Shown: one piece after another, positions 34,003-50,359 of the stretch | Numbering within the stretch: the stretch's first letter is position 1 | Layout of the letters: the number at the start of each line of letters is the position of its first letter | IMG/VR virus record: IMGVR_UViG_3300036770_006893 | Location: 124,001 to 188,000 of that record | DNA length: 64,000 bases | Direction: 5' to 3' (one strand) | Notes under the pieces: generated by a model | What the model saw: only the letters and a program-made list of their open reading frames with translations | Database searches by the model: none | Told to the model about the DNA's origin: nothing | Position numbers and translations under genes: made by a program

Positions 34003-34041
34003 TATATTTAATTTTTCTATTATGTTTTTATGGGTTCGCTA

Positions 34042-34263: not shown

Positions 34264-34288
34264 AATAATTCTCCTTCGGTATACTAGT

Positions 34289-34300
34289 ATAATACACCAA
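34289..34300 (-). promoter_or_regulatory. GGTGTA motif (candidate late promoter)
   Basis: TTGGTGTATTAT in intergenic gap. Confidence 0.45.
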
Positions 34301-34311
34301 ATTTATAGATA

Positions 34312-35394
34312 CTATAATTGTCCACCATCAGTAATATTCCAATTATAGGTAGTACTTAATACATTTCTGGCTGACGCTGCGGCAGACGAATATTTATTTG
34401 TTCCAACTCCCCAAATCACATCATTAGAAGGAGATAATAGTTGAGACCAAGCAATAAGGGCTGCGTCGTAGTTTGATGTTCCCCAAGTGTCGCTGAAAAA
34501 CATCGACTCCATAGTAGTGACCTTGCGAATGTCCCAGCTGGAAATGTCTTGAGTAAAGGCAGTTGCTCCGCTAAAAGTAAGCAACAAGGTAGTAACGCTT
34601 GCTGTGTTCCAAGAGCTAATCGGTTGGTTGAACGAGGACGCATTCTGGAACATGCCTCTCATATTAATCACCTTAGATGTATTCCAAGAACCGATTGGCT
34701 GGTTGAAGGCACTGCAACCGGCAAACGTACCATTCATGTTTGTTACGGCCGATGTATTCCAAGAACCGATAGGTTGATTGAAAGAGTATGAGTTGAAGAA
34801 CATGAAGCCCATGTTTGTTACGGCTGATGTGTTCCAAGAACCGATGGGCTGGTTGAAAGAGTATGCGTTGAAGAACATGAAATCCATGTTTGTCACAGTG
34901 GAAGTATTCCACGAAACAATATTAACATCATTAAATTGTGAACAACCACTAAATGCTCCTTGAAGACTAGTAATGTTACTATTAGTTGGCAAGTTTGCTG
35001 GGCATTGAATAAGGTTTATGCAGTTTGCATATGCATTTAGGAGCGAGGTTAATCCAACAGTTCCAAAACTTAAACACCTTACGAGTTTAGATCTATTGTT
35101 TGTTGTACTATTTGCGGTTCCGTAATTTAGCTGTGTCATCGTGCCACTAATTTGCACAACATAAATTCCGGGAGTAGCATAAGTATGAGTCTTAAATCCA
35201 GTGGTGGTGTGCGACTCGCTTGAACCGTCGCCCCAGTCTATGACGCAGTTAACCGTTCCATTAAGAGGTACAGATATGGTATTGTTTATAGGCTCTTTTG
35301 AAGTATCGTAGACTAATACTAAATTAGTAGTATCGTAGTTAAACCTTATTTGCGAACCTATTAAAAGACTATTATTTTTTACAAAAGTACTCAT
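34312..35394 (-). CDS. BspA/DUF285-type repeat surface protein with PKD-like N-terminus
   Basis: IDWGDGS..H.Y..PG.Y.V; repeats [20 protein letters not shown]. Confidence 0.85.
34530..34920. repeat. 75-bp (25-aa) degenerate tandem repeat
   Basis: gt(a/g)ttcca anchors at 34604, 34679, 34754, 34829, 34904. Confidence 0.9.
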
Positions 35395-35897: not shown

Positions 35898-36153
35898 CCT
35901 CTTTTGGTTTTTCTATCCATACTCTAGTAATATCAGCATAAGGTTTGTCTAATACTATTGATCGTTTTGTTACGTCTTCTCTTTCGCAATTTTCGGGTAT
36001 TTCACTATTGTCATTTCTAACAGTATAAAATCCATAATCAGATAAAATTTCTGCGTTATTTTGATCAAAATTGATCATTAGTACACCATCAGGATTAAAG
36101 AAATTCTTGGGCACCCTGCGTAATAATGATTCGTTTTCTGTATAGTAAAACAT
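35881..36153 (-). CDS. Hypothetical protein, paralog of the N-terminus of 35391..35897
   Basis: GFYTVRNDNSEIPEN...DITRVW vs [15 protein letters not shown]...DIIRTW. Confidence 0.7.
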   Translation of the reverse strand: MFYYTENESLLRRVPKNFFNPDGVLMINFDQNNAEILSDYGFYTVRNDNSEIPENCEREDVTKRSIVLDKPYADITRVWIEKPKEDDNVL

Positions 36154-36163
36154 TTATATTTCC

Positions 36164-37936
36164 TTAGTTAGTTTTTTCGCCTATATAGTGGCCTTGAATA
36201 GTACCATTAATACTTCTTAACAAGACTAAGTATTTTCCAGCAACAAAATTTGGTGGGGGATTGTACCAATCATCAACAATACTCCAAATTACATTAATAG
36301 GGTTGGTAAACGTCAATTCTAATAACACATCAACACTCTTAGCACTAGGCCAATTTGATCCTTCTATAAAATTAATGTTAGTAACTGTATTTTGCCAATT
36401 TGCAAAAACTTGAATCTGTCTATCTATAGCATACGATATACCAAAATTTACTGATGGGCCTGGTATTGTACCAATGGATGGAGCATATATCAGAGTAGGC
36501 GCACTTAGTCCATTATTTACAGTTAAACTACCATTTAATGTATTGTCTTCTGATGTTTGTTGATAAAAATTTCGGCCTTGAATCGTTCCAGTATTTAGTA
36601 GAGTACCGTCTGGATTTAAATATACCGTTTTATCTAAAAGATTATCTCCACCACTACTGGTGCGCAAATAAATTCTAGCACTAGGATTTAAAGAAGTTGA
36701 GGATGCCTCATCAACAATCTCCATTCTTAAACCGCCAAGAATAGTCACGTTTTTGTTATAATCTAAACTTTCTCCTCGTACAGCAAATATACCATCACCA
36801 CTATTAGCTATTTCTGGTAAAACTTGTGTGCCTCGTGCTCTTCTAAAAATTAATCTACTTGGTTCGATATCAGCGTTATAGAATTGATTAATTCTAAAAT
36901 TGCCTATGGTTTCATCAGCTATTAGCCTAAGAGTATTATTATCTGTGCTATATGTTAAATACGAGCTAGGTTCCCAATTGTTTGTGTTAGAATTATATAC
37001 TAATAAATGATCGTTTTGTAAACCGGCTAAATCTACATCATGATTATCATCTAAATGTCCATAACTAGTTGGTCTTACAAAAATGCGACCAGTATTTTGA
37101 CTAACATATAATACTATAGCAGCGCTGATGCTATGTTTTGGTTCAACCTTTGTTAATTTACCAGGAACTGTTGGATGAACATATAATATGTCACCTTCAA
37201 CCCAAGCTGGTTCATCGGCCGCATATAAATTTTGATCGCCATTAACTGCTCCGTTGCCTCTGGTATCTAAATTTTCAACATGACCAAAATTAATAGCATA
37301 ACCTTTTTGATTAATGTCAATATCTGTTAATACTAATCCCATAAAGCGTATTTCTCTTATAGTTCCATCAGCAGTGTACAAACTAGCTTCTATGAGAGAG
37401 TTATTATGAACATCACTGACATAAACTGCTTGACCAGCTCTAAGAATGGAACCAGTATTATTGCGAATTCTAAAATAGTTATGTTCGCCAACATGAATTT
37501 TAGTCCCACCTTCTAGACCCAAATCCAATGTGCCTTGTGCTTCATCCCAACCTATTTCAGCAGTTTCTATTGTAGGGTCTGCTGTTATGTTAAAAGATAT
37601 TTTATCAAATTCAGCATTGCCGCTGGTACTAATGGTTAAATTATCATTATCGTCATCATAAACTATATTTATTCCGCTACCGGGTATTAAAAATCCGCTG
37701 GCGCCAACAACATCTTGAACATCTTCTGGCTGCAATATAACGTCTTGATTATTTTCTGATTGTAAATATGGTAAGCTATTCCAAGCAGTAACTCCATCGC
37801 CAATTTTTAATTTACCAGTATCTTTTTCATATCCTGGCTCTCCTAAGCGTAAAACTTCACCACCGGGTTGCGGCTCACTATTGGCCCATTCAGCAGCGGT
37901 ACCTCTTCTAAATTTTATTACATCTTTACGCGTCAT
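36164..37936 (-). CDS. Putative tail fibre with Mtd-N/hyaluronidase-type N-terminal domain
   Basis: IKFRRGTAAEW...GEPGYEKDTGKLKIGDGVTAWNSLPY. Confidence 0.75.
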   Translation of the reverse strand: MTRKDVIKFRRGTAAEWANSEPQPGGEVLRLGEPGYEKDTGKLKIGDGVTAWNSLPYLQSENNQDVILQPEDVQDVVGASGFLIPGSGINIVYDDDNDNLTISTSGNAEFDKISFNITADPTIETAEIGWDEAQGTLDLGLEGGTKIHVGEHNYFRIRNNTGSILRAGQAVYVSDVHNNSLIEASLYTADGTIREIRFMGLVLTDIDINQKGYAINFGHVENLDTRGNGAVNGDQNLYAADEPAWVEGDILYVHPTVPGKLTKVEPKHSISAAIVLYVSQNTGRIFVRPTSYGHLDDNHDVDLAGLQNDHLLVYNSNTNNWEPSSYLTYSTDNNTLRLIADETIGNFRINQFYNADIEPSRLIFRRARGTQVLPEIANSGDGIFAVRGESLDYNKNVTILGGLRMEIVDEASSTSLNPSARIYLRTSSGGDNLLDKTVYLNPDGTLLNTGTIQGRNFYQQTSEDNTLNGSLTVNNGLSAPTLIYAPSIGTIPGPSVNFGISYAIDRQIQVFANWQNTVTNINFIEGSNWPSAKSVDVLLELTFTNPINVIWSIVDDWYNPPPNFVAGKYLVLLRSINGTIQGHYIGEKTN

Positions 37937-37991
37937 AGTATTCTGTTGCCCTTTTAAATAGATGGCTCATTTTAATATATTCGCTATTTAA

Positions 37992-38003
37992 GTAATACAC
38001 CAA
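37992..38003 (-). promoter_or_regulatory. GGTGTA motif (candidate late promoter)
   Basis: TAA-TTGGTGTATTAC immediately after the stop of the 1878-aa gene. Confidence 0.45.
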
Positions 38004-41000
38004 TTAAATATCCCAACCCGCCTGTCTAAGATTAACTAATGCTTGCGCACCAGGAATAGTTCTTGCGATTATCGTACCACGACTACTAGTACGCACTCTA
38101 ATTTTTGTATTAGCAGTATAATTGTACTCGAACGCAGAACTTGCTGGCCTGGGTGTTGTGAAATAAGTAGAGAATAATGATTTATTTTGATCCCATTTGA
38201 TTAACAGATTGTCCAAGTCACTGCCCGGTAAATACAAATCGCTCAGTAAAGCAGGGAGAATCCAATCGTCTGTTCCCAGAATACTAAAGTCTGCCGCATC
38301 CTTAAGACTACTAGCATTCCATCTAGATAATTTTGTTGTGTATCCGGTAAGCCTAAACATATCTCGCATACTTATAACATTAGAAACATTCCAATTATTG
38401 ATATCTGTTGTGAAAGCACCAGCATTATAAAACATGCTATTCATATTTGTAACTTGAGAAGTATCCCAATTGCTTATATTTCCTCTAAAGCTTACAGCCG
38501 ACTCAAACATAGAACTCATGTTTGTAACTTTACCGGTATTCCAAGAATCTAGTGTATCGCCGGTAAATGCCCGAGCGTCTTGAAACATCCTCGACATATT
38601 TGTAACATTGCTGGTATCCCACAGGGATAACGGAATATTAAATCTTACACATCCTCGAAACATGTTATTCATATCATTTATGCTCGATGTGTCCCAGCTC
38701 ATAACATTAGGGTCATTGAAAGTAGTACATAATGGTAGTTGTATGTGTTCGGCCTTTGGAATATAATCTGGAACAGAATTGAGGAGTGGTAAAGAGTCTA
38801 AAGTTATTCTCTTAAGCGAACTTATCCAAGAAGATATTCCCGTAACACCGCCTGCTACACTCGATGTGGGAGTAGAGGTAAAGCTATCAGCAATGACTAC
38901 ATCCGTAGTATTAGTATGATTAATTGGAGTAATTTTAATAGATCCAGTTTTATTCCTTGCAGTAACCACACTAGGTCTTCTGTCGGTAAAGTTAATAACT
39001 AGCCTATGTTTGCCATCAAAGAATACTGTTCCAACTACCCCATCCTGCTGAGTTCCGCCCTCTACTAAGTACCAGCTGGGCTCCGACGCGTCTATAGTAA
39101 TCGTTATAGCCATCGTACTAGAATTAATTAGGGTAGAATAATTATGGCCATAATCTATAATTAAGGGGCTTATTACTGAGTCAGGTGGTATTGGAGAAAC
39201 ACTAACGCTTGGACTAACAGTAGGACTGATGGTTTGTGTTGGTGTTGCTGTTGCGCTAACGCTAACGCTAACGCTTGGAGTGGGCGTCATGCTGTGTGTT
39301 GGCGTTAGTGTTGGAGTCATGGTTTGCGTTGGTGTTGGAGATCTCGATGGCAATGGTGTTGGTGTTACTGTTGCGCTCACGCTATTGGTTGGCGTTACTG
39401 TTCTTGTTACAGTCGGCGATACTGTTATACTTGGACTAACTGTTTGGCTAACCGTAACCGTGGGTGTGGTCGTGGGTGTAGTAGTTGGACTATTAGTTAT
39501 TGTTGGCGTGGGCGTAGGAGTTCTTGTACTAACGGGAGTTGGAGAAGGAGTTGGGGTGCATTGTGCTGCACACTTTAATGCAATGTAGTCTGTGCTTGTG
39601 GCGCCGGTTGATTCTCTAGTTAATCTAATAAAAGCATTAACATTTACATTACCATTCAGGAGGGCTAAAGATGTTAATCTAGCATTATTTGCCACATAAA
39701 CGTGGCCGCCAGCAGGATAAAATGAAACATTGCTAGAATCACTACCAAATCTAAAATAGTACTTTTCTTTAGAAATATTATTAGTACTAGACAAGTCATC
39801 TATATAACTATCTGGTAAATAATTTTTAATATCTACCATAATTGGTATATATTGTTTACATCCATTTCCAGAAACTTCTATTTGACGATTAGAAGGAGCA
39901 ACAAACTCTACATCTGTTACAAATTCCTTGGAATAGCATTTGTTGCATTTTAATAAAGACTCAGACCAAGCAATACCACAATTTGGTTGAGATGCTTTTG
40001 CTATATTGAAACGTAATATATTATAGATTTTACTAAAATCTTTAGTTTTTTCAGAAACTGGTGGTAGATTAAAATTAGTGTTTTTATCATTGACAAATGT
40101 AAAGGTGGATGATATTGTATGAGTATCGCCATTTGCAATGAACACATTATCTTTATCGGATATATGAGCTGGCCAATTACTGTCGGTGGAATCAAAGAAA
40201 TACGAATATGATGTATTTTTAGATAGTCCAGTTACCACAACATCAACCACAGCATGATCACCCTCAAATTGAGACAAATCAATATTATTAGTCATAGATA
40301 ATATTTTAGGGCATTTATTGTACTGTTCTTTAGCGTCATGGCATGAGTCGCACTGTACAGTAAAGATATGATCAACTTTTTCTGGACATAAAGTTTGGAT
40401 ATTTTTAGCATTTCCCGAAGAATCAGATAAAACAGGCTGTGGAGCATCATGGGATTGGGTGGGATATGTCCAATAGGCGGCTAGTTCTGAATCATAAAAT
40501 GCCGCCTTGTACCATTCGTTGTGAGATGGAATAAAATATTTTGCATCAAAATTTCTGTATATTTGGTTATCAAATATTATATTGCGTAAATCATATGCTC
40601 CGACTAGTAGTTTATCATTGATAGTAGCAGGATCGTATACTCTAATATTAACGTCAAAAGACCCGAAGTTATCTTCAGTACATCTGACATCGTTTATGCC
40701 TAGGTATAGTCGTCCAGAAATTTCTGGGTTATACCTACCGCCAGTACCTATTTCAAAAATAGTTCCATTATCTCCTATTTTTCCAACCAAAGCAGCCACT
40801 GGTATACTTACTGCTTGAGGAACATCAAAGCCACAAGTTGCGGAAGCGAGTTCTCCTAAATTAACACCCTCTGGTCCTGTCCATTGGTTTATATCAGTAA
40901 CATCTGTAAACTTAATTGTCCCAGACGCTTGTATCTCAACAATAGAGTCGGGATGTAAGTCTATATTGGAATCAACCCAATCTTGAGCTATAGAATTATT

Positions 41001-43640
41001 TGGTACATTTTCATATATATCCCATCCTTTATTATTGTGTAACCAATTGCAGTATTTTGCGGCTCTAATCCAGGAGATAAAATTAGCAGGTTTATTGCTC
41101 ATTAACGGTTTAATTACATATCTTTCTCCAAAGTTTTTGCATGAATCTAAGGCTATGCCTCCTGTATGATGGTTCGCCATTCTGTAATCATACAAATCAA
41201 GATTATTTTCACCCAGAGGATCAACAGTATTTAAATAGTCGCAGTATTCTTGATTAGTTAATAAATTTTGTTGTATATAATAACTATAGTATACGCTACC
41301 AAGATTACAACTTTCTGGGCTTGGGTCGTTAATATTTCCTTCGTTTTCTATTATAATAAAATTATTATAATTGTCTGGATTTTCATATGAAGCAATTCTT
41401 AGACCAAATCCTCCGTCGTCAAAAACAGAAAAAATATCATGGTTTTTAAATATGTGCTTACTAAGAGCAAGACTATCGCTATCTAGCCAGCTACCACCAC
41501 GTAAAATTTTATGATTAGGTTTATTGTCTGGGCTAGTATCTGTCCATTCGTATAACTGACCGGCCATATCATAGATACCATATTTTGATGGCCTTCCATT
41601 AAGGCCGATTGTTGTTAATCCAGCATTACCACCCCATACGGCCCTTTCTGCGTAATTACATGAATTATTATCTAATTCTTTGTTGCTATTAAGAGACAGC
41701 TTAATAACAGAATAAATATTTTTATCATTACTGATAAGCTTTGATAGATTAGCTTGTTGAATAAACACATCATCAAAACCAAATTCTATAACCCCAGCGA
41801 TTTCTGATGTTTGGTCATGTCTATTTGTGATTATTCCAGATAAGGGATAGATTGAACACGGGGCAGAAGCGTCCACAGATTCAAAAGAGTAAGAATAATT
41901 ATCTAAAAGCCCGGATAGTGATATATTGAACGGGATCATTAATCCTGTAGATATAATTAAATTATCAGAATTAATACCAGAAATATTGATATTTGGACAT
42001 ATGTTGGTTTCACAAAGGATTTTTGGATCTGCCTCTAAGCATCTGGGTATATGTATATCTTTATCTGGGTATTCACGAGTTATAAAATAATAGGATTCGC
42101 CAGGTTCTAGTTCAGATAAGGAGCTGTATGGATTAGGTACAAATGCATTACCAGATGGTAATACCCAAAAAATTGCAGTATTATCATCTATACTTTTTGT
42201 ACTATATATAGTAGAAATATTGTCTATAAAATTGTGCCATAGTTGATATTGTTTTTCTCCAGGCTGAAAAACCTTATCTCCACATTTAGGCTCAAGTAAA
42301 GATAGTTTATCACTACCAAGATATGTTTTAATATTAAACATCGATTCTAGAATCATGTTATTAATATTATCTACTTGTGGCGCCGTAAATATTGATGGGG
42401 TGGGTGTGTTACTTGGGGTTGTGGTTATTGTTGGTGTTACTGTGGGAGTTACTGATCTTGTTGGCGTTGGAGTTTTTGTGGGTGTTTTTGTTGGACTTAT
42501 TGTATTTGTGGGAGTACTTGTTGAGGTTGGGGTTGTAGTAACAGTAGTAGTGACTGTTGGGGTTGGGGTTAGTGTTGGTGTGATGCTGCTAGTTGGGGTG
42601 TGGGTTGGAGTAGTTGTAGGTGTGGTTGTTATGGTCGGAGTTGTTGTTGGAGTAAGACTAACAGACAAAGATTGTGTAGGAGATAAGGTTGGAGTTACTG
42701 TATTTGTTGGAGTAGTAGTTGGAGTTAGGCTTGGTGTCAATGTAGGGGTGGGACTAGGAAAAATATTATTTACTGGTCCATCACCTAATATGTTCGATAT
42801 AACGCATGATGGGTCTGTATCGTATTGCGTAGCATATAACCAATATCCACTATTTAATCCGTCAGCTTTATAGTATGCTGATTTATACCATTCATTTTCT
42901 GAAGATATAGCATATTTAGCATTTGGGTTTCTAGTTATAGACAATATATTAGTGCCATTAGTTAAATCATATGCGCCCGATTCTGTATCTCCGAAATCAT
43001 TATGAAGCCAATTCGCCATCCTTGCGGCACAAAACCAGTCAACATAATTTACTGGCTTATTTGACATATTATTTTTAACTATATATTTTGATCCAACAGG
43101 ATTGCTAGGAACATAAATAATACCTCCTCTAAAATTATTTGTCATATCTATAGAATATGTATTATACAGATTTTGGCCGCTAGGATCTGTGTTGTTCAAA
43201 AATTCGACATATTCTTGATTAGTGACAGGATGTATCATGATGTGATAATCATAAGATACTGATCCTTTTGAGTTTGTGTCGGCTTCATTACCAGAGTCGT
43301 TTATCCCTACAAAAGAACCAAAAATAGAACCAATTGATAAATGTACTAATCTAAAACCTATATTAAATGATTTCGTACTAGCGGAACTATTGATAGAAAA
43401 ATTAGAAGATAAAACCGAAGTGGTTGTTGAGTTCCAGGCTCCTCCTCTAAGAATTTTATTATAATTGCCTTGATTTTCTATGGTATTTTCATTCCATTCC
43501 CAAACATTTCCGGATTGATCTCTTGTCCCGTATGCACTAGTGCCACCATTTGTACCTACTGAGGTAATATTACCGTTTTGTAGATTCCATCTAGCACAAT
43601 TATTAAAATTGGCAGTATTACTACCTTTTGGAAAAGCCAT
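38004..43640 (-). CDS. 1878-aa mosaic adhesin-like protein: two permuted FGE/C-type-lectin domains, lectin-like insert, two Pro/Thr tracts, BspA repeats
   Basis: GTNGGTSAYGTRDQSGNVWEW, RGGAW, GFR, VTNQEYVEFLN, ENEWYKSAYY; ALVGKIG..GRLYLGIND; WDTSNVTNMSRMF. Confidence 0.85.
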   Translation of the reverse strand: MAFPKGSNTANFNNCARWNLQNGNITSVGTNGGTSAYGTRDQSGNVWEWNENTIENQGNYNKILRGGAWNSTTTSVLSSNFSINSSASTKSFNIGFRLVHLSIGSIFGSFVGINDSGNEADTNSKGSVSYDYHIMIHPVTNQEYVEFLNNTDPSGQNLYNTYSIDMTNNFRGGIIYVPSNPVGSKYIVKNNMSNKPVNYVDWFCAARMANWLHNDFGDTESGAYDLTNGTNILSITRNPNAKYAISSENEWYKSAYYKADGLNSGYWLYATQYDTDPSCVISNILGDGPVNNIFPSPTPTLTPSLTPTTTPTNTVTPTLSPTQSLSVSLTPTTTPTITTTPTTTPTHTPTSSITPTLTPTPTVTTTVTTTPTSTSTPTNTISPTKTPTKTPTPTRSVTPTVTPTITTTPSNTPTPSIFTAPQVDNINNMILESMFNIKTYLGSDKLSLLEPKCGDKVFQPGEKQYQLWHNFIDNISTIYSTKSIDDNTAIFWVLPSGNAFVPNPYSSLSELEPGESYYFITREYPDKDIHIPRCLEADPKILCETNICPNINISGINSDNLIISTGLMIPFNISLSGLLDNYSYSFESVDASAPCSIYPLSGIITNRHDQTSEIAGVIEFGFDDVFIQQANLSKLISNDKNIYSVIKLSLNSNKELDNNSCNYAERAVWGGNAGLTTIGLNGRPSKYGIYDMAGQLYEWTDTSPDNKPNHKILRGGSWLDSDSLALSKHIFKNHDIFSVFDDGGFGLRIASYENPDNYNNFIIIENEGNINDPSPESCNLGSVYYSYYIQQNLLTNQEYCDYLNTVDPLGENNLDLYDYRMANHHTGGIALDSCKNFGERYVIKPLMSNKPANFISWIRAAKYCNWLHNNKGWDIYENVPNNSIAQDWVDSNIDLHPDSIVEIQASGTIKFTDVTDINQWTGPEGVNLGELASATCGFDVPQAVSIPVAALVGKIGDNGTIFEIGTGGRYNPEISGRLYLGINDVRCTEDNFGSFDVNIRVYDPATINDKLLVGAYDLRNIIFDNQIYRNFDAKYFIPSHNEWYKAAFYDSELAAYWTYPTQSHDAPQPVLSDSSGNAKNIQTLCPEKVDHIFTVQCDSCHDAKEQYNKCPKILSMTNNIDLSQFEGDHAVVDVVVTGLSKNTSYSYFFDSTDSNWPAHISDKDNVFIANGDTHTISSTFTFVNDKNTNFNLPPVSEKTKDFSKIYNILRFNIAKASQPNCGIAWSESLLKCNKCYSKEFVTDVEFVAPSNRQIEVSGNGCKQYIPIMVDIKNYLPDSYIDDLSSTNNISKEKYYFRFGSDSSNVSFYPAGGHVYVANNARLTSLALLNGNVNVNAFIRLTRESTGATSTDYIALKCAAQCTPTPSPTPVSTRTPTPTPTITNSPTTTPTTTPTVTVSQTVSPSITVSPTVTRTVTPTNSVSATVTPTPLPSRSPTPTQTMTPTLTPTHSMTPTPSVSVSVSATATPTQTISPTVSPSVSVSPIPPDSVISPLIIDYGHNYSTLINSSTMAITITIDASEPSWYLVEGGTQQDGVVGTVFFDGKHRLVINFTDRRPSVVTARNKTGSIKITPINHTNTTDVVIADSFTSTPTSSVAGGVTGISSWISSLKRITLDSLPLLNSVPDYIPKAEHIQLPLCTTFNDPNVMSWDTSSINDMNNMFRGCVRFNIPLSLWDTSNVTNMSRMFQDARAFTGDTLDSWNTGKVTNMSSMFESAVSFRGNISNWDTSQVTNMNSMFYNAGAFTTDINNWNVSNVISMRDMFRLTGYTTKLSRWNASSLKDAADFSILGTDDWILPALLSDLYLPGSDLDNLLIKWDQNKSLFSTYFTTPRPASSAFEYNYTANTKIRVRTSSRGTIIARTIPGAQALVNLRQAGWDI

Positions 43641-43653
43641 ATTTGGTCCTATT

Positions 43654-43665
43654 AAATTTTTATGT
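43654..43665 (-). promoter_or_regulatory. GGTGTA motif (candidate late promoter)
   Basis: TTGGTGTAAATC in gap upstream of the 1878-aa gene. Confidence 0.45.
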
Positions 43666-43707
43666 GATATATTGATTTACACCAATGTTTTAGGTCGTAA
43701 TTAATTT

Positions 43708-44124
43708 TTATGAGCATATTGGTATCAATAAAGCCTTATCATCAGGAGCGCATTGCTCAAAAATAACTTCATCAGTAGAAGGGTCTATAATTTGTATTTT
43801 GGCTATGCCTCTATGTACAGAGCCAGGGCTTGGGATGCCAACGAGTTCTATTTTATATTTAGCATCTTGCGAAGCTGTGCCAGCGGGTAATATTATTCTA
43901 GATTCTCTATATCCACCATCTGATGCATTATTTAAATCAATTTCTCCAACTTCGTTGGAATTAATATAAACATCAAATCTTGCTCTATTGCACCTATGAC
44001 CACCGGAACATACCGATGGATCATAGCTTACTTTTAATACAAAAGAACTGATATCTTCGTATGCAACGCACGGTGGAGGAGGTTCTGGATCTGGGAAGTC
44101 GATACAAGAATAGTCATCGGTCAT
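43708..44124 (-). CDS. Hypothetical Cys-containing beta-rich protein
   Basis: 138 aa; PPPPC, CSGGHRCNRA. Confidence 0.7.
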   Translation of the reverse strand: MTDDYSCIDFPDPEPPPPCVAYEDISSFVLKVSYDPSVCSGGHRCNRARFDVYINSNEVGEIDLNNASDGGYRESRIILPAGTASQDAKYKIELVGIPSPGSVHRGIAKIQIIDPSTDEVIFEQCAPDDKALLIPICS

Positions 44125-44136
44125 AATAGAATTCCT

Positions 44137-45336
44137 TTAAGAACATATAGGCTGCTTATTAAATGTTGATACTATCCATCTTATCCATCTTTCAGAATTG
44201 CACAGTATGCGTCTTGTTGTCAATCCATTATTTTTAGCTATGGTGAAATATTCTGATACTCCATCTTTTACCGAAGACCAGCCGAGAGAAGGGCTATCAT
44301 CGACAAATACATTAACCTGAGAAGAGGGATTGATGTCACCAAAAGCTTCTTTTATTTTTTCGTTTATCCAATTCCCAGTCAATGGCTCATTATTTATTAT
44401 ACAAGCGGGGACATTTCTAGACGATGGTATTATTCTAGAATCTGGTATTGGCATCTGGTATCCGTCTGGCACATTAATATATGGATATAATGGTAAAATA
44501 GTACATTGTTGTTTGATAAAAGATCTTACATGAAATATTAAAATTTTATTTACGTCTATAGCTTTAAGGCTGTCCAATAATTTAAAATCATCCATGTCCT
44601 GATACCAGTATATATTAGGGGTACCATATGGGGATTGATTAACATATCCAAAAATATTTGGTGCTGATGGATATAAAGACTCGTCAGCAAAAATAATACA
44701 ATAATCATCAAAGCCTATGCCTGCTTCTGGAGGCTGTGGGGGAGGGGGCAGAACAGGAGGATCTAATGCCTTACACACAGTATTTGAGTACTGATTTGGC
44801 GATCCAGGACCACAACAATCTGTTCCGCCAACCCTAAAACATATTCTAGAATAATTTTTATCATTAAAGACATTACCCGGAATAATAACTTGTATATATG
44901 TTTTATCGCAAGTTGGTGTTGGTATGGGGGAACATCTCAAAACTAAAACATCATAGGTTATCAAAGCTCCAACTCTTGTTGTTTTACCACAAATATATGC
45001 TGTAGTATCTAAACTAGCACCCTCATACTCAGCAACTATAGATACCTGCTCGCCGATGATCCAGTCGTCTATAGGAGAACCGGGATATAACAAGGAATTC
45101 GCACCGCGTATAACCTGAAATAAACAATCATCACCTATGCATTTTTTATATGGATCATTAAGTTGATCGCTATTATAAGTAACCGCACATGCTACCCAAG
45201 AAGACCCAGAGGACAGACCCTGTATTCTGAAGGCGCTTTCAGTAAAAACACAATTACATTCTATTGGGACAAATTTACTAAAGCATGCATTGTCAGAGTA
45301 ATCACAATATCTCAGCGATTCTTCAGTAGGTATCAT
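44137..45336 (-). CDS. Hypothetical Cys/Pro-rich protein, putative virion component
   Basis: 399 aa, many Cys, PPPPQPP linker. Confidence 0.7.
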   Translation of the reverse strand: MIPTEESLRYCDYSDNACFSKFVPIECNCVFTESAFRIQGLSSGSSWVACAVTYNSDQLNDPYKKCIGDDCLFQVIRGANSLLYPGSPIDDWIIGEQVSIVAEYEGASLDTTAYICGKTTRVGALITYDVLVLRCSPIPTPTCDKTYIQVIIPGNVFNDKNYSRICFRVGGTDCCGPGSPNQYSNTVCKALDPPVLPPPPQPPEAGIGFDDYCIIFADESLYPSAPNIFGYVNQSPYGTPNIYWYQDMDDFKLLDSLKAIDVNKILIFHVRSFIKQQCTILPLYPYINVPDGYQMPIPDSRIIPSSRNVPACIINNEPLTGNWINEKIKEAFGDINPSSQVNVFVDDSPSLGWSSVKDGVSEYFTIAKNNGLTTRRILCNSERWIRWIVSTFNKQPICS

Positions 45337-45354
45337 AATTATTACTCACAAAAT

Positions 45355-48015
45355 TTACGGAATTAAATTAGTACAAATCGATGGTAGAGTTATATACTGA
45401 TATGGGCTGCAATCAACCCAAGAGGCATCTGCACGTTGCCAATCTGCAAAACTTACTTCGTGCTTAATATTAACGTAGTATAGGCCACAATGTAATTCAT
45501 CTATGCAATTAATATGATTAATAGCTAAATATAATCGACCAGATGCTGCTGCTTTAAGAGACAGGTCGGATCCTATAAAGAAAGGCGATCCGTTTTCACC
45601 AATTTTGCCTATTAGTGATAGGGAAGGTAAGTGTTGAGCTTCTTGTAGTTTGCATGAAGTTAAATTGTTTGAGATACCATTAGGACCGGATTGTAGAGGA
45701 ACGGGTGTTGTAACGGTGGATGGGGACAGAACAGACGATGGGTAGTACACGACTCCAGTAGCCCCAAACTCTAATTCTTCTTCATCTACTATGTCTATAA
45801 AAGTATCTTTCCACGAAGGGGTTCTGGCTCCAACATATATATCAATAGATTCTCTTTCTATAAGTCTGTATTCAACGTTGCAACAACAGCTTGGGTTTCT
45901 AAGCATATCTAGTATAAAAATACCTCCGCCATCAGCTAATTTGTCGGTTAGTGTAGCATCACAAATTTCTATACTTGGACATTCACAAATAGCGTCTCTT
46001 GGGAAGGGCCCATTTTTAAGACTATCTATTAATGGACATACGGGTTGTTTGTTTGACTGTGTGGCATATCGATAATATCTCGAATCAATGGGGTTATAGT
46101 ACGCAGCCTTATACCACTCATTGTCTGTTGGTAAGAAATATTTTGCGTCGTTGTTTCGCTTAATTAAATGTATATTCCTTGGCGATACATCAGAAGGTAT
46201 ACTATAGGCGCCATCTTCTGTGTCTCCGAAATTATTGTGTAACCAATTACAGTATCTTATGGCGGTTAGCCAGGTAACAAAATTAACTGGTTTATGGTCC
46301 ATATTTTGTTTTAGATAGTATTCATATCTATCTTTTAACGGATTGAATCTTCTGATAATTCCTCCGTTATTATCATCTTCCATTTCTTGGTGATATAGTC
46401 GTAAGTGATCGGAAGATTGATCGAATGCTACAGAATTTAGAAATGCTATAAACTCATAGTTAGTTACTTCATACTTATGGATTTTGTAGCTATATTTTAC
46501 TCTTCCAAAACCAAGCGAACTAGATAGATTGCAAGGCTCGTTTACATCGGCGAAACACTTGATATCTAATGGGTTATTATACGATGCTATTCTAAAACCA
46601 AATTGTGAAGACACCTGATCAAAATTATTGGAATACCGAGACGATAAGCTAAACGCATCGATTTCCATTAAGCTACTAGCATAGGAACCGCCCCTAAGTA
46701 CTTTATGTAAGGTATTATCTCCTGTTGATTCTGTCCACTCCCAAACATTTCCATTTTGATCAAAAGTACCATACCCACTCTGTCTACCATTAGTACCTAC
46801 TGTTGTAACTATAAAAGCATAGTCTGTGGGGTCGCAGTCTATACATCCGGCAAAATTAATAGAAGATCTAACATCAGGAGATGGACTTGGAGTAGGAGAA
46901 ACTATTGGACAGTCCGCCGTTGCGCAACCGCAGTTATCGTTTTTTACCACTACAATTTTAGAATCTTCTAGATGTGTTTCTAGATCAAGTACTCTAATTG
47001 ATACAGTGGCGCTATCAGATGATTCTAGTCTAGTTAATAAAAGAGTAATGTCTTGATTGCCATCGTATTTGGCAACAAATTCTATTTCACTAGGCACGAT
47101 TTTTGTAATACTATCATAATCATTGGAAAATATGTTGACTTTGTATCTATGAGAAGATATTAATGGTCCTATAGATGCCTGTATAATACAATCATTTAAT
47201 GCTAAATTCGGAGTAATAGAAGGAGTAGGAGATGGGGCAGGGCAAGAGGTTTCGCTAGGGGTCGGTGTTGGCGTGGCTGTTCTAGTGGGTGTTGGTGTGG
47301 GCGTTCTTGTTGGTGTCTTAGTAGGTGTGGCGGTTTGTGTTGGGGTAACGGTCGGAGTACTAGTTGATGTGCGTGTGGGTGTGTTGCTAAGAGTTTGGGT
47401 TGGTGTGATAGTTATGCTAGATGTTGGGGTCAGGCTAGCAGTAAGGCTTACGGTGATAGACGGAGTAGGGGTATGAGTCAAAGAAACCGAAGGGGTCGGA
47501 GTTTGTGTTGGAGTGGTGGAGGGTGTCGGGTTTGGGGTAGGCGTTACAGAAGCTGTTACGCTAGGTGTCGGATTGGGGGTTGGTGTGCATGTTGGGGTTG
47601 GGGTGGCAGATACGCTTATACTTATACTAGGAGTCACCGAGACACTCGGGGTAACAGTAGGGGTGTTAGTTGGCGTTATCGTTGGTGTGGCGGTTGGTGA
47701 GGGTGGTGGAGGAATATCCTCAGAAGTTACTTGACCTATCCAGTTACCTGTGCGGGCACTAACTACTAACCACCTACTACCATTCCATGCCCAATGACCA
47801 TTATCGTTTGGAGAACTATAATTAGTTCTGGAATCATTTATGGGGGACCTAGGATCTATAAAAGTTATTCGACGCCCTCTTTCGTACTCTATACTATGAA
47901 GCTTATTTATTGTAAGCGTATCAAAACGGATAGATCCAGGTGCGTTAGGCTCATAGACTGGCCTATTAAAATATGATGTGACCGACCTAAAGCCTACTCG
48001 TCTATAAATTGCCAT
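45355..48015 (-). CDS. 886-aa adhesin-like protein: Pro/Thr tract, permuted FGE/C-type-lectin domain, lectin-like C-domain
   Basis: About 165-aa (TP)n tract; GTFDQNGNVWEW, RGGSY, GFRIAS, YEVTN, DNEWYKAAYY; SLIGKIGENG..GRLYLAIN. Confidence 0.85.
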   Translation of the reverse strand: MAIYRRVGFRSVTSYFNRPVYEPNAPGSIRFDTLTINKLHSIEYERGRRITFIDPRSPINDSRTNYSSPNDNGHWAWNGSRWLVVSARTGNWIGQVTSEDIPPPPSPTATPTITPTNTPTVTPSVSVTPSISISVSATPTPTCTPTPNPTPSVTASVTPTPNPTPSTTPTQTPTPSVSLTHTPTPSITVSLTASLTPTSSITITPTQTLSNTPTRTSTSTPTVTPTQTATPTKTPTRTPTPTPTRTATPTPTPSETSCPAPSPTPSITPNLALNDCIIQASIGPLISSHRYKVNIFSNDYDSITKIVPSEIEFVAKYDGNQDITLLLTRLESSDSATVSIRVLDLETHLEDSKIVVVKNDNCGCATADCPIVSPTPSPSPDVRSSINFAGCIDCDPTDYAFIVTTVGTNGRQSGYGTFDQNGNVWEWTESTGDNTLHKVLRGGSYASSLMEIDAFSLSSRYSNNFDQVSSQFGFRIASYNNPLDIKCFADVNEPCNLSSSLGFGRVKYSYKIHKYEVTNYEFIAFLNSVAFDQSSDHLRLYHQEMEDDNNGGIIRRFNPLKDRYEYYLKQNMDHKPVNFVTWLTAIRYCNWLHNNFGDTEDGAYSIPSDVSPRNIHLIKRNNDAKYFLPTDNEWYKAAYYNPIDSRYYRYATQSNKQPVCPLIDSLKNGPFPRDAICECPSIEICDATLTDKLADGGGIFILDMLRNPSCCCNVEYRLIERESIDIYVGARTPSWKDTFIDIVDEEELEFGATGVVYYPSSVLSPSTVTTPVPLQSGPNGISNNLTSCKLQEAQHLPSLSLIGKIGENGSPFFIGSDLSLKAAASGRLYLAINHINCIDELHCGLYYVNIKHEVSFADWQRADASWVDCSPYQYITLPSICTNLIP

Positions 48016-48016
48016 T

Positions 48017-48322
48017 TTATCTTTCTATTCTACTTTCTAGTGCCTCTAGCGTATGGCCTAAAGTAGCTATTTGTAATTTAAGCTCATTCATAACTTCTGT
48101 ATTTCTTTGTAGAGCAGCAGCAAATGCTGCTTGGGTTTCTTTATTAACGGCTAGTCTTTCCATTATAAACTGACGATCTTGAACATATGGTGACTTTGTT
48201 TCTATCATATCGCATACTTCGCTTTTAGTAGCCATATTACGACCTATAGTAAACCAAAATCCTAACATAGTTAATATAATACCTATACTTGTTGTTGCAA
48301 CGTATTGCCATACTTCTGTCAT
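48017..48322 (-). CDS. Single-TM + coiled-coil protein
   Basis: SIGIILTMLGFWF then heptad-rich C-terminus; SD GGAGG. Confidence 0.7.
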   Translation of the reverse strand: MTEVWQYVATTSIGIILTMLGFWFTIGRNMATKSEVCDMIETKSPYVQDRQFIMERLAVNKETQAAFAAALQRNTEVMNELKLQIATLGHTLEALESRIER

Positions 48323-48342
48323 TTTATTTAACCTCCATCAAT

Positions 48343-48375
48343 AAAAAAGCCAATGATACGAATAGCATCACTGGC
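48343..48375 (-). terminator. Rho-independent terminator
   Basis: GCCAGTGATGC-TATTC-GTATCATTGGC-TTTTTT on minus strand. Confidence 0.8.
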
Positions 48376-48413
48376 TTAAGGTAATAAGTATTTAACAACC
48401 TATTAAATATATA

Positions 48414-48920
48414 TCAATTGGTTTTGCTAGAATAGCTTGTAACAACTGGATAGTTTTTATTTCCAAGAGTATATGTTATAACACCAGGGGATTGTCTATT
48501 CGTTCTTGCGGCATTGTCTTGGCCAAAAGAATCCACAGAAGTTTGTGGCGCTACTGTCCATTCATGATCAAACTCATTCCAATAGCCAGCTCTAAAAGCT
48601 GTGGCGTATTTTGTTGTGGTAATGCTTTCAATTTTTAATGGCGAAGAAATTAATCCTGGCATACCAGCACCGCTTAGTAAGTAGTCGTTAGTTAGTCCAC
48701 CAGCTAAAAACACCGTTATTCTTTTGGCTATTGGTTCGTTGTTGTCGTGTGGGAAATTACCTAATATGGTATTTTTTGTGACATCTGATGTTTCGACAAC
48801 TCTTGATCCAATGCTTTCAGGCACAAAACCATCTGGAACTGAAGCTAATAGTCTTGTTGCCGTAATGCGATGGGTTGCGCCGCCATTATTATTAATTTTG
48901 TTAACTGACAGAATTGCCAT
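48414..48920 (-). CDS. Hypothetical (putative structural) protein
   Basis: Start corrected to ATG 48920 (SD GGAG); flanked by TTGGGGTATCAT motif and terminator. Confidence 0.7.
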   Translation of the reverse strand: MAILSVNKINNNGGATHRITATRLLASVPDGFVPESIGSRVVETSDVTKNTILGNFPHDNNEPIAKRITVFLAGGLTNDYLLSGAGMPGLISSPLKIESITTTKYATAFRAGYWNEFDHEWTVAPQTSVDSFGQDNAARTNRQSPGVITYTLGNKNYPVVTSYSSKTN

Positions 48921-49019
48921 ATTAATCTCCATAACTTTTATGTTAATTGAGTAAACCATCTCATATATGATACCCCAAAAAGACGAAATAACGCAAATTT
49001 TGTTTACTAGAGATTAGGC

Positions 49020-49667
49020 TTATATAAGGGTTAATGCATTTAAATTATTTATTCTAAAACCGTAGATATTTGAATGCAATATATTATTTACATGTTGTTG
49101 GCGGTAAATATTGCCATTACATATGGTTTTTATATTGGTTTTTGTTTGTAAAAATTTGCAAGCAATAATATTGTCATTTATATCGTCCAGCATCATTCCA
49201 GATGATGGTAAAATAGTATCAATATTTAGGTCTTTTAAAATTTGGCAAACTTTAGCTAGTACATCATGTCCATATCTTCTATATTCTAAGACATATCTGA
49301 GCTGAACATTATTTTTTGAACATATATCAAGATTTGTTTTTATATCTTCTCTTAATTTATCATATTTACGATTAGTTATTGCCTTAGTGGGTATCATAAG
49401 GTCTATAAAAGAAATTTTATTGGATTTAGCTAGATGCTCAACCGTATAATTTCTTGTTTTTTGGTCAGAGAGACCGTAGGGAAAATCTATAGGGCAGCCG
49501 AATTTAATGTCGCTATCTACAGAAAATAGTTCAGATCTAATATAGTTTATAGAGTATGGTAGTAAGAATATATTTTGAAGACCATGCTTAATAGCTGTTT
49601 CGACATTAAATGTCGTTTCTGTCTCATTTATATCATAGTCATAGCAACAATATTCTATATGTGTCAT
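49020..49667 (-). CDS. DeoC (deoxyribose-phosphate aldolase)-like TIM barrel, catalytic lysines apparently lost
   Basis: IDFPYG, FIDLMIP, LRYVLEY, ILPSSG (canonical IKTSTG), KTICNGN (canonical FKPAGG). Confidence 0.7.
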   Translation of the reverse strand: MTHIEYCCYDYDINETETTFNVETAIKHGLQNIFLLPYSINYIRSELFSVDSDIKFGCPIDFPYGLSDQKTRNYTVEHLAKSNKISFIDLMIPTKAITNRKYDKLREDIKTNLDICSKNNVQLRYVLEYRRYGHDVLAKVCQILKDLNIDTILPSSGMMLDDINDNIIACKFLQTKTNIKTICNGNIYRQQHVNNILHSNIYGFRINNLNALTLI

Positions 49668-50359
49668 ATTTTTTTACAGTAAGATTTGATGTAGTCTATA
49701 TTTGGAAATTTTTTAGTACCAAGTACCCCATCAGCAAATCCGTAATTAACAGCTTCTTCTGCTGTTAGTATCCAATCTCTTTTTGTTGCCAATTGTGTAA
49801 CGATATGTTTTTTTGCCATCATCTTTTTCCAATTTTTTTCTTTGCAAATCCTACTATTCATACACCTTTCGGTAAAGATGTCGATCATCTTATCGCTCTC
49901 TTTTTCGCTCCACTGAACCATGCTAAGTGCCGCTTTGTGCTCGTTGTCAACACTTATAGAACCATAATGGATTAAGAAGTTGGTGTTTGGAGTAAGTATC
50001 CTCAGGTCTGCTGCTTGTAGTAAAACACTACTACTTGATTCGACTTTTGCGTACGCTAGGATAGCTACCCTTGCTTTTGAATATTTTATTGCGTCAAAAA
50101 TACCCAAACAATCTTGCCAATCTCCTCCAGGCAAGTGCATATGAACTAGTATCGGTTCTAGAGATAATAAATTAAGGTATCGTAAATTTTTTTCAAATAT
50201 AACCGCGCTCTTGTAGTTTACTCCACCCTCCTCGTCACCGCCGTCTATAGAAGAGTGAAGGTAAATTTCTCTGTTTGGTATGTCTATATTATAAGAGTGA
50301 ATATATCCTATATCATATTCTATGTCGGAATATTTTTTATTTTTATTCATCATCATCAT
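49664..50359 (-). CDS. clpP: ClpP-family serine protease
   Basis: REIYL, HLPGG, KVESSSSVLL (Ser), FLIHYG (His), RDWILTAEEAVNYGFAD (Asp). Confidence 0.85.
   Translation of the reverse strand: MMMMNKNKKYSDIEYDIGYIHSYNIDIPNREIYLHSSIDGGDEEGGVNYKSAVIFEKNLRYLNLLSLEPILVHMHLPGGDWQDCLGIFDAIKYSKARVAILAYAKVESSSSVLLQAADLRILTPNTNFLIHYGSISVDNEHKAALSMVQWSEKESDKMIDIFTERCMNSRICKEKNWKKMMAKKHIVTQLATKRDWILTAEEAVNYGFADGVLGTKKFPNIDYIKSYCKKI

What the first reader, a model, noticed from the sequence alone, without database searches (positions are those of the whole stretch)
38004..48015. Circularly permuted FGE/C-type-lectin domains in three copies
Seen: all three copies (about 43616-42800, 41655-40436, 46860-46045) run ANF...GxxDQxGNVWEW...RGG(S/A)W...GFR first, then a short linker, then F(V/I)xIxxxGN...VTNxE(Y/F)...PVN(F/Y)VxW...NEWYKAA(Y/F)Y...YxTQ. 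Established: canonical FGE-sulfatase/SUMF1-like domains have the reverse order and end in GFR, and the fold's termini are adjacent, so permutation is feasible. The FGE catalytic Cys pair is absent. Inference: a permuted, non-catalytic binding domain in which the usual DGR-variable C-terminal segment has become internal.
Basis: partly seen in the sequence, partly recalled or inferred. Interest (0 to 1): 0.75.

Follow-up and report, generated by a model that had tools for sequence, protein, structure and literature searches.

The report
Circularly permuted FGE-type lectin domains, phage
Two giant surface-protein genes of an uncultivated 224-kb phage carry three copies (a fourth lies elsewhere in the genome) of a sulfatase-modifying-factor/C-type-lectin-like domain whose two halves are in swapped order. 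This is a true circular permutation, apparently undescribed, seen here only in virus contigs, and most likely a non-enzymatic sugar- or surface-binding module.

Summary
In all three window copies the first piece matches Pfam FGE-sulfatase positions about 154-254 and the second piece matches about 30-137. A fourth copy elsewhere in the same 224-kb phage genome has the same swapped order.

The swap is a real circular permutation, not debris of a tandem array:
- Units start at protein N-termini, are bounded by Pro/Thr linkers, or sit alone in about 315-aa reading frames.
- Swapping the halves in silico turns two out-of-order BLASTP matches to single-domain bacterial relatives into one match over about 96% of the unit.
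- AlphaFold2 folds the unit as one compact domain, pLDDT 94 and pTM 0.92. Each half superposes on the matching part of solved FGE-family structures.

The FGE cysteine pair is absent family-wide. No reverse transcriptase is present here or in 48 related viral records, so there is no diversity-generating retroelement (DGR).

Among the fetched loci the permuted form occurs in virus contigs, many 130-244 kb. The canonical form of the same subfamily occurs in Planctomycetota/Verrucomicrobiota genomes.

Copy 2 carries a nested LecA/PA-IL-like lectin domain.

Most likely role: glycan or surface binding on phage fibre-like adhesins. This is inferred, not shown. It is a new topological variant of a known fold.

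The parts
38004..43640 (-). p1, a 1878-aa multidomain adhesin-like protein. Order: permuted FGE unit 1, Pro/Thr linker, unknown region, permuted FGE unit 2 with nested lectin, Cys-rich region, Pro/Thr linker, DUF285/PARCEL repeats.
   Evidence: ORF list and translation; Pfam FGE-sulfatase 3.8e-23 and DUF285 8.8e-43
43326..43640 (-). Copy 1, first piece. It matches the C-terminal half of the canonical FGE domain (GNVWEW, RGGAW, GFR) and starts at the protein N-terminus.
   Evidence: Pfam PF03781 profile 154-254, 40.3 bits, E 3.7e-10
42786..43325 (-). Copy 1, second piece. It matches the N-terminal half of the canonical domain (VTNQEY, PVNYV, NEWYKSAYY, ATQ).
   Evidence: Pfam PF03781 profile 30-124, 28 bits, E 2.1e-6; swapped-halves BLASTP gives a single HSP over residues 6-282 of 285
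42366..42758 (-). Pro/Thr-rich linker of about 130 aa that separates copy 1 from the rest of p1.
   Evidence: Translation; PT motif positions; degenerate 6-12-nt periodic repeats
41376..41678 (-). Copy 2, first piece (matches the canonical C-terminal half).
   Evidence: Pfam PF03781 profile 172-236, 29.7 bits
41025..41375 (-). Copy 2, second piece, part a (canonical N-terminal half up to the CNWLHNN helix).
   Evidence: Pfam profile 36-109, 15.9 bits, below cut-off; phmmer against the copy 3 N-half, query positions 9-117
40566..41024 (-). 153-aa LecA/PA-IL-like beta-sandwich lectin domain nested inside the second half of copy 2.
   Evidence: Homologous to p2 aa 733-851, E 1e-11. Pfam PA-IL 21.5 bits, just under the 22.5 cut-off. 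The profile matches PllA 5odu (E 5e-6) and LecA 1l7l (E 1.4e-3) over nearly full length. Modelled as an all-beta insert in the AF2 model.
40416..40565 (-). Copy 2, second piece, part b (GAYDL, NEWYKAAFY, PTQS).
   Evidence: phmmer against the copy 3 N-half, query positions 137-184; AF2 pLDDT above 95 for the flanking FGE parts
38286..38729 (-). DUF285/PARCEL surface-protein repeats near the C-terminus of p1.
   Evidence: Pfam DUF285; NCBIfam PARCEL repeat
45355..48015 (-). p2, 886 aa. Order: N-terminal about 100 aa, Pro/Thr linker, permuted FGE unit 3, Cys-rich spacer, LecA/PA-IL-like domain.
   Evidence: The public gene call starts at M307 (580 aa).
46576..46863 (-). Copy 3, first piece (matches the canonical C-terminal half).
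   Evidence: Pfam profile 168-254, 34.5 bits. In the model, residues 1-95 superpose on EgtB-IV 8vig 340-442, rmsd 1.5 A over 83 residues.
46021..46575 (-). Copy 3, second piece (matches the canonical N-terminal half).
   Evidence: Pfam profile 35-137, 43.3 bits. In the model, residues 96-281 superpose on the N-terminal two thirds of FGE, TvpA, CarF and PvdO, Z 4.5-6.8.
45463..45819 (-). Free-standing LecA/PA-IL-like lectin domain at the C-terminus of p2. It is a paralogue of the insert in copy 2.
36164..37936 (-). Neighbouring 590-aa gene with an Mtd_N tail-fibre N-terminal domain (context).
   Evidence: Pfam Mtd_N 3.3e-11; PHROGs tail fibre / minor tail families
34312..35394 (-). Neighbouring DUF285 + PKD-like protein (context: adhesin-like gene cluster).

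Best explanation
Each unit is a genuine circular permutant of the FGE-type C-type-lectin (CLec) fold. The old C-terminal strand (GFR) is joined by a 0-30-residue linker to the old N-terminal strand. The chain is opened instead in the surface loop between the 'NEWYKAAYY...YATQS' segment and the '...ANY...VGTNG...GNVWEW' segment.

It most likely arose by duplication and truncation from tandem arrays of a canonical subfamily. That subfamily is still found in Planctomycetota/Verrucomicrobiota surface proteins, many of them PEP-CTERM proteins.

The domain is not an enzyme of the FGE type, because the Cys pair is missing. It most likely acts as a ligand-binding (probably glycan-binding) module displayed on long, Pro/Thr-linked, fibre-like phage proteins. 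There it sits together with LecA-like lectin, DUF285/PARCEL and Fn3 modules and would serve host-surface recognition or adhesion. The segment that forms the ligand site in DGR variable proteins (between RGGSW and GFR) is now internal. It is diversified by paralogue divergence, not by a retroelement.

Shown: swapped order, exact permutation at sequence level, autonomous unit boundaries, absence of the Cys pair, absence of a DGR, and virus-versus-cell distribution in the loci sampled.
Predicted: a single compact fold (AlphaFold2).
Inferred: binding function, virion display, and origin by duplication and truncation.
For: Swapped Pfam segments in all copies. PDB sequence profiles also hit in swapped order: in SUMF2, CarF and PorK, profile 121-249 matches the chain's N-terminal part and profile 27-93 matches its C-terminal part.

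In-silico swap test: two out-of-order HSPs become one HSP. For copy 3 it covers 11-279 of 281 against 40-317 of a 349-aa bacterial protein, 37% identity, E 4e-52.

Unit boundaries: in (CN)n proteins most C-to-N gaps are under 30 aa (range 0-81), while N-to-C gaps run 37-809 aa. Many proteins start with the C-half within 10-30 aa of the N-terminus and end with the N-half 6-30 aa from the C-terminus. Fifteen near-complete phage genomes each hold 1-10 full-length (profile 2-276 of 277) units, including one in a 315-aa reading frame.

AF2: pLDDT 94, pTM 0.92. Both halves superpose separately on FGE-family structures. Sequential aligners find no full-length match in PDB, AFDB clusters, ESM Atlas or BFVD. 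A tandem canonical AFDB protein aligns colinearly in sequence across its domain junction, but at rmsd 25.6 A.

No Cys columns. The most variable stretch is positions 61-90. LecA-like lectin domains are nested or adjacent. The neighbourhood holds tail-fibre/adhesin-type genes and a head protease.

CLec-fold termini pair as antiparallel strands beta1 and beta5, and the variable region lies at the extreme C-terminus in TaqVP, Mtd and TvpA (PMC6328139).
Against: That the two halves pack exactly as in canonical FGE therefore rests on pTM, separate half superpositions and sequence logic.

There is no experimental or proteomic evidence that p1 or p2 are virion components or bind anything.

The tree of N-halves does not resolve a single origin: 7 label changes, of which well-supported branches force at least 3.

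The virus-versus-cell split comes from the best 80 loci per collection, not from an exhaustive census.
Confidence: 0.8

Rival explanations
1. The swapped order is only apparent. The pieces are remnants of decayed tandem canonical domains (the tail of one domain plus the head of the next) and do not form one fold.
For: Closely related proteins do exist as tight canonical tandem arrays: NCNC was the commonest pattern, 58 of the top 150 hits. In P0039 only 6-9 aa separate a C-half from the next N-half. A C-N window cut from such an array would look permuted.
Against: Copy 1 starts at residue about 7 of p1. Copy 3 is the only unit in p2. Units are separated by hundreds of residues or Pro/Thr linkers. 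A full-length unit sits in a 315-aa reading frame. Both halves are strongly conserved across the 63 aligned units, and the AF2 model is compact at pTM 0.92.
Confidence: 0.02
2. The halves complement each other between chains (3D domain swapping within a trimeric fibre) or between neighbouring units, rather than within one unit.
For: Phage fibres are usually trimers, and Mtd is an obligate trimer (PMC6328139). Only a monomer was modelled.
Against: The short C-to-N linkers, the confident intramolecular packing in AF2, the single-unit proteins and the monomeric state of TvpA, TaqVP and AvpA all favour an intrachain fold.
Confidence: 0.05
3. The domain is catalytic: an FGE/EgtB/PvdO-like oxidative enzyme or a new activity acting on host or virion glycans or proteins.
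For: Public annotations call homologues 'formylglycine-generating enzyme' or 'SUMF1/EgtB/PvdO family nonheme iron enzyme'. The window holds several glycosyltransferases.
Against: The Cys pair that binds Cu(I) in FGE is absent family-wide. No DinB-type iron domain is attached: Pfam finds only FGE-sulfatase, DUF285 and a weak PA-IL match. NCBIfam enzyme equivalogs score 16-19 bits against cut-offs of 350-500. The region around the former active site is the most variable part of the family, as expected for a binding surface.
Confidence: 0.05
4. The fold and permutation are real, but the proteins are not receptor-binding virion parts. They could be capsid decoration that adheres to particles or mucus-like polymers, or proteins acting on the infected cell surface.
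For: No hit to baseplate or tail-fibre cores within p1 or p2. PHROGs families hit are of unknown function. Pro/Thr linkers and Fn3/PKD/DUF285 modules also occur in decoration proteins and cell-surface proteins.
Against: The genes lie next to an Mtd_N fibre gene and near the head protease, in one co-oriented block. Lectin-type modules in phages usually serve adsorption (Iyer et al. 2021, PMC7824862).
Confidence: 0.2

Closest known systems
FGE-sulfatase / SUMF1-like domain (Pfam PF03781; structures 1Y1E, 1Y4J, 2Q17)
   Same: Both halves are homologous at sequence level. Each superposes on the matching part of the fold. SUMF2/pFGE (1Y4J), the best PDB sequence hit, has no Cys at the aligned positions where FGE carries its pair (alignment).
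   Different: Segment order is swapped (circular permutation). There is no catalytic Cys pair. The domain is embedded in giant modular phage proteins.
FGE-type CLec-fold ligand-binding proteins of DGRs (TvpA 2Y3C, TaqVP, Mtd)
   Same: Non-catalytic FGE-subtype CLec scaffold. TvpA is among the best structural matches, Z 6.0. The segment equivalent to their variable region is the most variable part of this family. Both occur in phage or prophage settings.
   Different: Their variable region lies at the extreme C-terminus (PMC6328139); here it is internal, within the first third of the unit. There is no reverse transcriptase or TR/VR pair in this genome or in 48 related viral records.
Canonical 'NEWYKAAYY' subfamily of FGE-like domains in Planctomycetota/Verrucomicrobiota proteins, single or tandem, often with PEP-CTERM
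   Same: 32-46% identity over the whole unit once the halves are swapped. Same motifs, and likewise non-Cys. Tight tandem arrays of this subfamily are plausible precursors.
   Different: They have the canonical N-to-C order: in GTDB genome loci 54 ORFs read NC and none read CN. Viral loci read CN (59 ORFs) or (CN)n.
LecA (PA-IL) / PllA galactophilic lectins
   Same: The insert in copy 2 and the C-terminal domain of p2 match PllA and LecA over nearly their full length.
   Different: Pfam score is just below the gathering threshold, 21.5 against 22.5 bits. One copy is nested inside another domain. Sugar specificity is untested.

Membership tests
FGE-sulfatase domain family (PF03781) | Significant match to the family HMM above the gathering score | tested here: met
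   Whole proteins score 82.9 and 67.7 bits against a 23.3-bit cut-off. Five of six half-pieces exceed the cut-off on their own.
FGE-sulfatase domain family (PF03781) | Colinear N-to-C arrangement of the domain segments | tested here: not met
   Profile 154-254 precedes profile 30-137 in all four copies. BLASTP needs the halves swapped to give one HSP.
FGE-sulfatase domain family (PF03781) | Same three-dimensional fold | tested here: inconclusive
   The halves superpose separately, Z 4.5-6.8 and rmsd 1.5 A over 83 residues. The model is one rigid domain, pTM 0.92. No permutation-aware superposition could be run.
Formylglycine-generating enzymes (catalytic FGE) | Conserved Cys pair (human C336/C341) after the RGGS motif | tested here: not met
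   None of the window copies has Cys there. No column between RGG and GFR holds Cys in more than 3% of 63 units.
EgtB/OvoA/SenA sulfoxide or selenoxide synthases; PvdO | Match to the equivalog model; N-terminal DinB-like iron domain | tested here: not met
   NCBIfam scores of 16-19 bits against cut-offs of 280-500. No other Pfam domain is attached.
DGR variable proteins | DGR reverse transcriptase in the element | tested here: not met
   PF00078 is absent from the 224-kb genome and from 48 related viral records, 15 of them at least 90% complete.
DGR variable proteins | Template repeat (TR) nearly identical to a variable region (VR) | tested here: not met
   In 36000-50000 the only direct repeats are Pro/Thr-linker periodicities and 63-78% paralogue matches.
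PA-IL / LecA lectins (PF07828) | HMM match above the gathering score; full-length homology to solved LecA-type lectins | tested here: inconclusive
   Pfam 21.5 bits against 22.5. A profile of 11 homologues hits PllA at E 5e-6 and LecA at E 1.4e-3 over about 95% of the domain.
Phage tail-fibre / receptor-binding proteins | Virion location and host binding | not testable with these tools
   Only context is available: adjacent Mtd_N fibre gene, DUF285, Fn3 and PKD proteins, head protease.

The most novel reading that the evidence does not exclude
A virus-specific topological variant of the FGE/C-type-lectin fold. On this reading it was born by duplication and truncation from tandem surface lectins of PVC-type bacteria. 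It then became a principal, paralogue-diversified host-recognition module of a widespread clade of uncultivated 130-244-kb phages. The permutation moves the chain entry and exit points away from the beta1/beta5 strands. That would let the domain be strung along fibres and accept nested lectin inserts, giving a retroelement-free alternative to DGR diversification of the same binding surface.
Probability: 0.3. Interest if true: 0.7.

Novelty: new variant of a known kind. Interest (0 to 1): 0.55.

Why it matters
The FGE-type CLec fold is the best-studied scaffold for hypervariable ligand binding in phages and bacteria. A natural circular permutant shows the fold tolerates new chain termini and a nested domain, which is useful for protein engineering of this scaffold.

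The permutant gives only split or partial hits with colinear tools. Pfam sees two out-of-order fragments. Foldseek finds only half-domain matches (TM 0.2-0.57) in PDB, AFDB clusters and ESM Atlas and nothing in BFVD. Public annotation therefore mislabels hundreds of phage proteins as 'formylglycine-generating enzyme'.

A survey of 224 jumbo phage genomes reported no FGS/FGE domains (PMC7824862). Here the domain is present in 1-10 copies in each of 15 near-complete large phage genomes. This points to an overlooked adhesin family in uncultivated large phages. It also provides a clean example of the duplication-truncation route to permutation, with the presumed tandem intermediates still extant.

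Tried and rejected
- Megablast and tblastn against GenBank phages found no match to the region or to the domain. The phage is distant from cultured ones: the best DNA polymerase identity listed is about 35%.
- Sequential structure searches (Foldseek on PDB, AFDB clusters and BFVD; the ESM Atlas shape search) returned only half-domain or spurious hits. This is expected for a permutant and does not show a new fold.
- DGR hypothesis: rejected.
- A fusion of copy 1 with the upstream ORF 43708-44124 was considered. That ORF has no FGE signal.
- Single-origin test by tree: inconclusive. FastTree on 183 columns gave 7 label changes, at least 3 of them forced, and the largest split holds 94 of 120 permuted units plus 3 canonical ones.
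- The 'query_residues_matched' column of the search for related loci turned out to be a union of HSPs, not proof of colinearity. I therefore re-derived the order of the halves per ORF with phmmer.
- A terminase search with PF17289 found nothing. Host and phage clade remain unassigned.
- Literature: no paper combines 'circularly permuted' or 'circular permutation' with FGE-sulfatase or sulfatase-modifying factor. Two papers holding 'permuted' together with 'C-type lectin fold' refer to other proteins.
Full report
**Setting.**
- The window is bases 124001-188000 of a 224,357-bp IMG/VR virus record that CheckV rates complete.
- Nearly all genes run on the minus strand. They include a split Pol III-alpha-type DNA polymerase, a helicase, a primase, ribonucleotide reductase, several glycosyltransferases and a head maturation protease.
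- GenBank phages hold no nucleotide or protein match to the region. The polymerase reaches only about 35% identity in the best listed hits.
- This is therefore an uncultivated jumbo phage of unknown host, with about 33-35% G+C.

**The observation.**
- The finding spans two ORFs: p1 (38004-43640, minus strand, 1878 aa) and p2 (45355-48015, minus strand, 886 aa).
- I cut each copy at the GFR/linker boundary and scanned the pieces separately. The first pieces match Pfam FGE-sulfatase (255 positions) at 154-254, 172-236 and 168-254. The second pieces match at 30-124, 36-109 and 35-137.
- A six-frame scan of the whole genome gives the same picture and reveals a fourth swapped copy at G000:C1:97186-97995. 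It lies in a 1875-aa protein that ends in two Fn3 domains.
- A profile built from 63 permuted units hits solved FGE-family chains in swapped order too. For SUMF2, profile 121-205 matches chain 34-138 and profile 27-92 matches chain 195-267. CarF and PorK behave likewise.

**Is it a true permutation or a slice through a tandem array?**

This matters because close relatives do form canonical tandem arrays. An HMMER search of 1.84 billion representatives with copy 3 gave 7171 hits, 780 of them below 1e-30. Among the best 150, 67 proteins read (NC)n and 45 read (CN)n. Four lines of evidence show that the CN units are autonomous.

1. **Boundaries.**
   - In (CN)n proteins most C-to-N gaps are under 30 aa (range 0-81), while N-to-C gaps run 37-809 aa.
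   - Many proteins begin with the C-half 10-30 aa from their N-terminus and end with the N-half 6-30 aa from their C-terminus.
   - In the window, copy 1 begins at residue about 7 of p1 and is followed by a Pro/Thr linker of about 130 aa. Copy 3 is the only unit in p2.
   - The ORF upstream of p1 has no FGE signal.
2. **Full-length units in other genomes.** Fifteen near-complete phage genomes of 131-244 kb each hold 1-10 units that match the permuted profile end to end (positions 2-276 of 277), with E-values down to 1e-116. One of these sits in a 315-aa reading frame.
3. **A formal swap test.**
   - In native order, each window copy gives two out-of-order BLASTP HSPs against single-domain bacterial relatives.
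   - When the halves are exchanged in silico (for alignment only), a single HSP crosses the old junction and covers about 96% of the unit. For copy 3 this is 11-279 of 281 against 40-317 of 349, 37% identity, E 4e-52.
   - The canonical relatives read '...NEWYKAAYY...YPTQS...P', then 15-30 aa, then 'ANY...VG...GN.WEW...RGGS...GFR'. The permutant is therefore cut in that connecting loop.
4. **Structure.**
   - AlphaFold2 on the 63-unit alignment gives pLDDT 94 and pTM 0.92 for copy 3. The model is one rigid body, not two tethered pieces.
   - VIA-align places model residues 96-281 on the N-terminal two thirds of CarF, TvpA, PvdO and several FGEs (Z 4.5-6.8). It places residues 1-95 on the C-terminal part of EgtB-IV, rmsd 1.5 A over 83 residues.
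   - Sequential aligners find no full-length match in PDB, AFDB clusters, ESM Atlas or BFVD.
   - Tellingly, the top AFDB hit is a tandem canonical protein that aligns colinearly in sequence across its C1-N2 junction but at rmsd 25.6 A. The same sequence order is packed differently there.
   - The CLec fold's N- and C-terminal strands (beta1 and beta5) pair antiparallel (PMC6328139). This explains why a short linker suffices to join the old termini.
   - What I could not do is a permutation-aware 3D superposition, because model coordinates are not exposed.

**Catalysis and DGR.**
- The FGE Cys pair is absent in all window copies. No alignment column between RGG and GFR holds Cys in more than 3% of 63 units. 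NCBIfam enzyme equivalogs (EgtB, SenA, PvdO) score far below their cut-offs.
- The genome has no reverse transcriptase. The region has no TR/VR-like repeat. None of 48 related viral records carries an RT.
In TaqVP, Mtd and TvpA the variable region is the extreme C-terminus and forms the ligand site. Its equivalent here is positions about 61-90 of the unit, which is internal. It is the most variable stretch of the family, at 2.6-3.0 bits of column entropy.
- Diversity comes from paralogue expansion: four units in this genome and up to ten in a relative.

**Distribution and origin.**
- I re-derived the order of the halves per ORF in all fetched loci. IMG/VR loci are almost all CN: 59 ORFs read CN, others read (CN)n, and only one ORF, cut off by its locus end, reads NC. 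GTDB genome loci are mostly Planctomycetota and Verrucomicrobiota MAGs, and they are almost all NC: 54 read NC, a few are tandem, and none reads CN.
- A FastTree of 302 N-halves shows the two forms strongly clustered, with 7 label changes against about 94 for shuffled labels. It does not show clean reciprocal monophyly, since well-supported branches force at least 3 changes. The number of origins is open.
- Tight canonical tandem arrays, with only 6-9 aa between a C-half and the next N-half, exist in relatives. These are the intermediates expected under the duplication-truncation model of permutation. That model is an inference here.

**Other parts.**
- Copy 2 contains a 153-aa insert between the CNWLHNN helix and the GAYDL segment. 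The insert is homologous to the C-terminal domain of p2, E 1e-11. Two related proteins, P0040 and P0047, share the nested arrangement.
- A profile of 11 such domains matches the LecA-family lectins PllA (E 5e-6) and LecA (E 1.4e-3) over almost their whole length. Pfam PA-IL scores just under its threshold.
- AF2 models copy 2 as the same FGE-type core (pLDDT above 95) with an all-beta insert of moderate confidence (overall pLDDT 86.5, pTM 0.87).
- p1 ends in DUF285/PARCEL repeats.
- The neighbours are an Mtd_N fibre-like protein, a DUF285+PKD protein and an Fn3 protein.

**Mechanism proposed.** These are modular, fibre-like phage adhesins. Their permuted FGE-type CLec units and LecA-like domains would bind host-surface glycans or other envelope ligands. 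This rests on domain content and gene context, not on direct evidence. Rivals are listed with their probabilities.

**Novelty.**
- Full-text searches found no description of a permuted FGE/SUMF1-type domain.
- A comparative study of 224 jumbo phage genomes states that no FGS domains were found in jumbo phages (PMC7824862).
- Public annotations of homologues read 'formylglycine-generating enzyme' or 'SUMF1/EgtB/PvdO family nonheme iron enzyme'.
- I rate this a new topological variant of a known fold family, widespread in uncultivated large phages. It is solid and of moderate interest, mainly for protein evolution, scaffold engineering and annotation of phage receptor-binding proteins.

Noticed in passing
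window 7494-11836 (-): The Pol III-alpha-like DNA polymerase is encoded in two ORFs (9965-11836 and 7494-9104). Between them lies a 229-aa ORF (9111-9800) with an RNase_T/DEDD exonuclease domain. This looks like a split polymerase with a separate proofreading subunit.
   Followed up: partly
window 46864-48015 (-): The public gene call for p2 starts at M307 (580 aa) and places two small opposite-strand genes in the Pro/Thr-coding stretch. The 886-aa ORF starting at 48015 abuts the upstream gene's stop at 48017 and is more likely the real gene. Its first 100 aa have no family hit.
   Followed up: partly
window 43708-45336 (-): Two ORFs between p1 and p2 (138 aa and 399 aa) have no Pfam or PHROGs hit at all. 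They may be chaperones or assembly factors for the flanking fibre-like proteins, but this was not examined.
   Followed up: no
window 32173-37936 (-): Further adhesin-like genes sit just downstream of p1: an Fn3 protein (32173-34002), a DUF285 + PKD-like protein (34312-35394) and a 590-aa Mtd_N tail-fibre-type protein (36164-37936).
   Followed up: partly
window 5293-6954, 25400-27559, 54946-56019, 62603-63889: An unusual number of glycosyltransferase genes, including a 719-aa GT1+GT2 fusion, plus a dehydrogenase at 56142-57242. Glycosylation of the Pro/Thr linkers or of host or virion surfaces is possible.
   Followed up: no
G000:C1:94975-100602 (+), outside the window (L168:76-5703): A 1875-aa protein with a fourth permuted FGE unit in its middle (aa about 735-1020) and two C-terminal Fn3 domains. 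It has a weak PHROGs minor-tail hit.
   Followed up: partly
G015 (IMGVR_UViG_3300009180_000021, 151,782 bp), about 40.8-66 kb: A related complete phage genome carries ten full-length permuted units within 25 kb, five of them in one 3754-aa reading frame. This is an extreme paralogue expansion.
   Followed up: no
window 38800-40415 (-) and 45820-46020 (-): Cys-rich stretches follow copy 2 in p1 and copy 3 in p2 (for example CECPSIEIC, and CCC runs). They have no family hit and may be disulfide-stabilised spacer domains.
   Followed up: no
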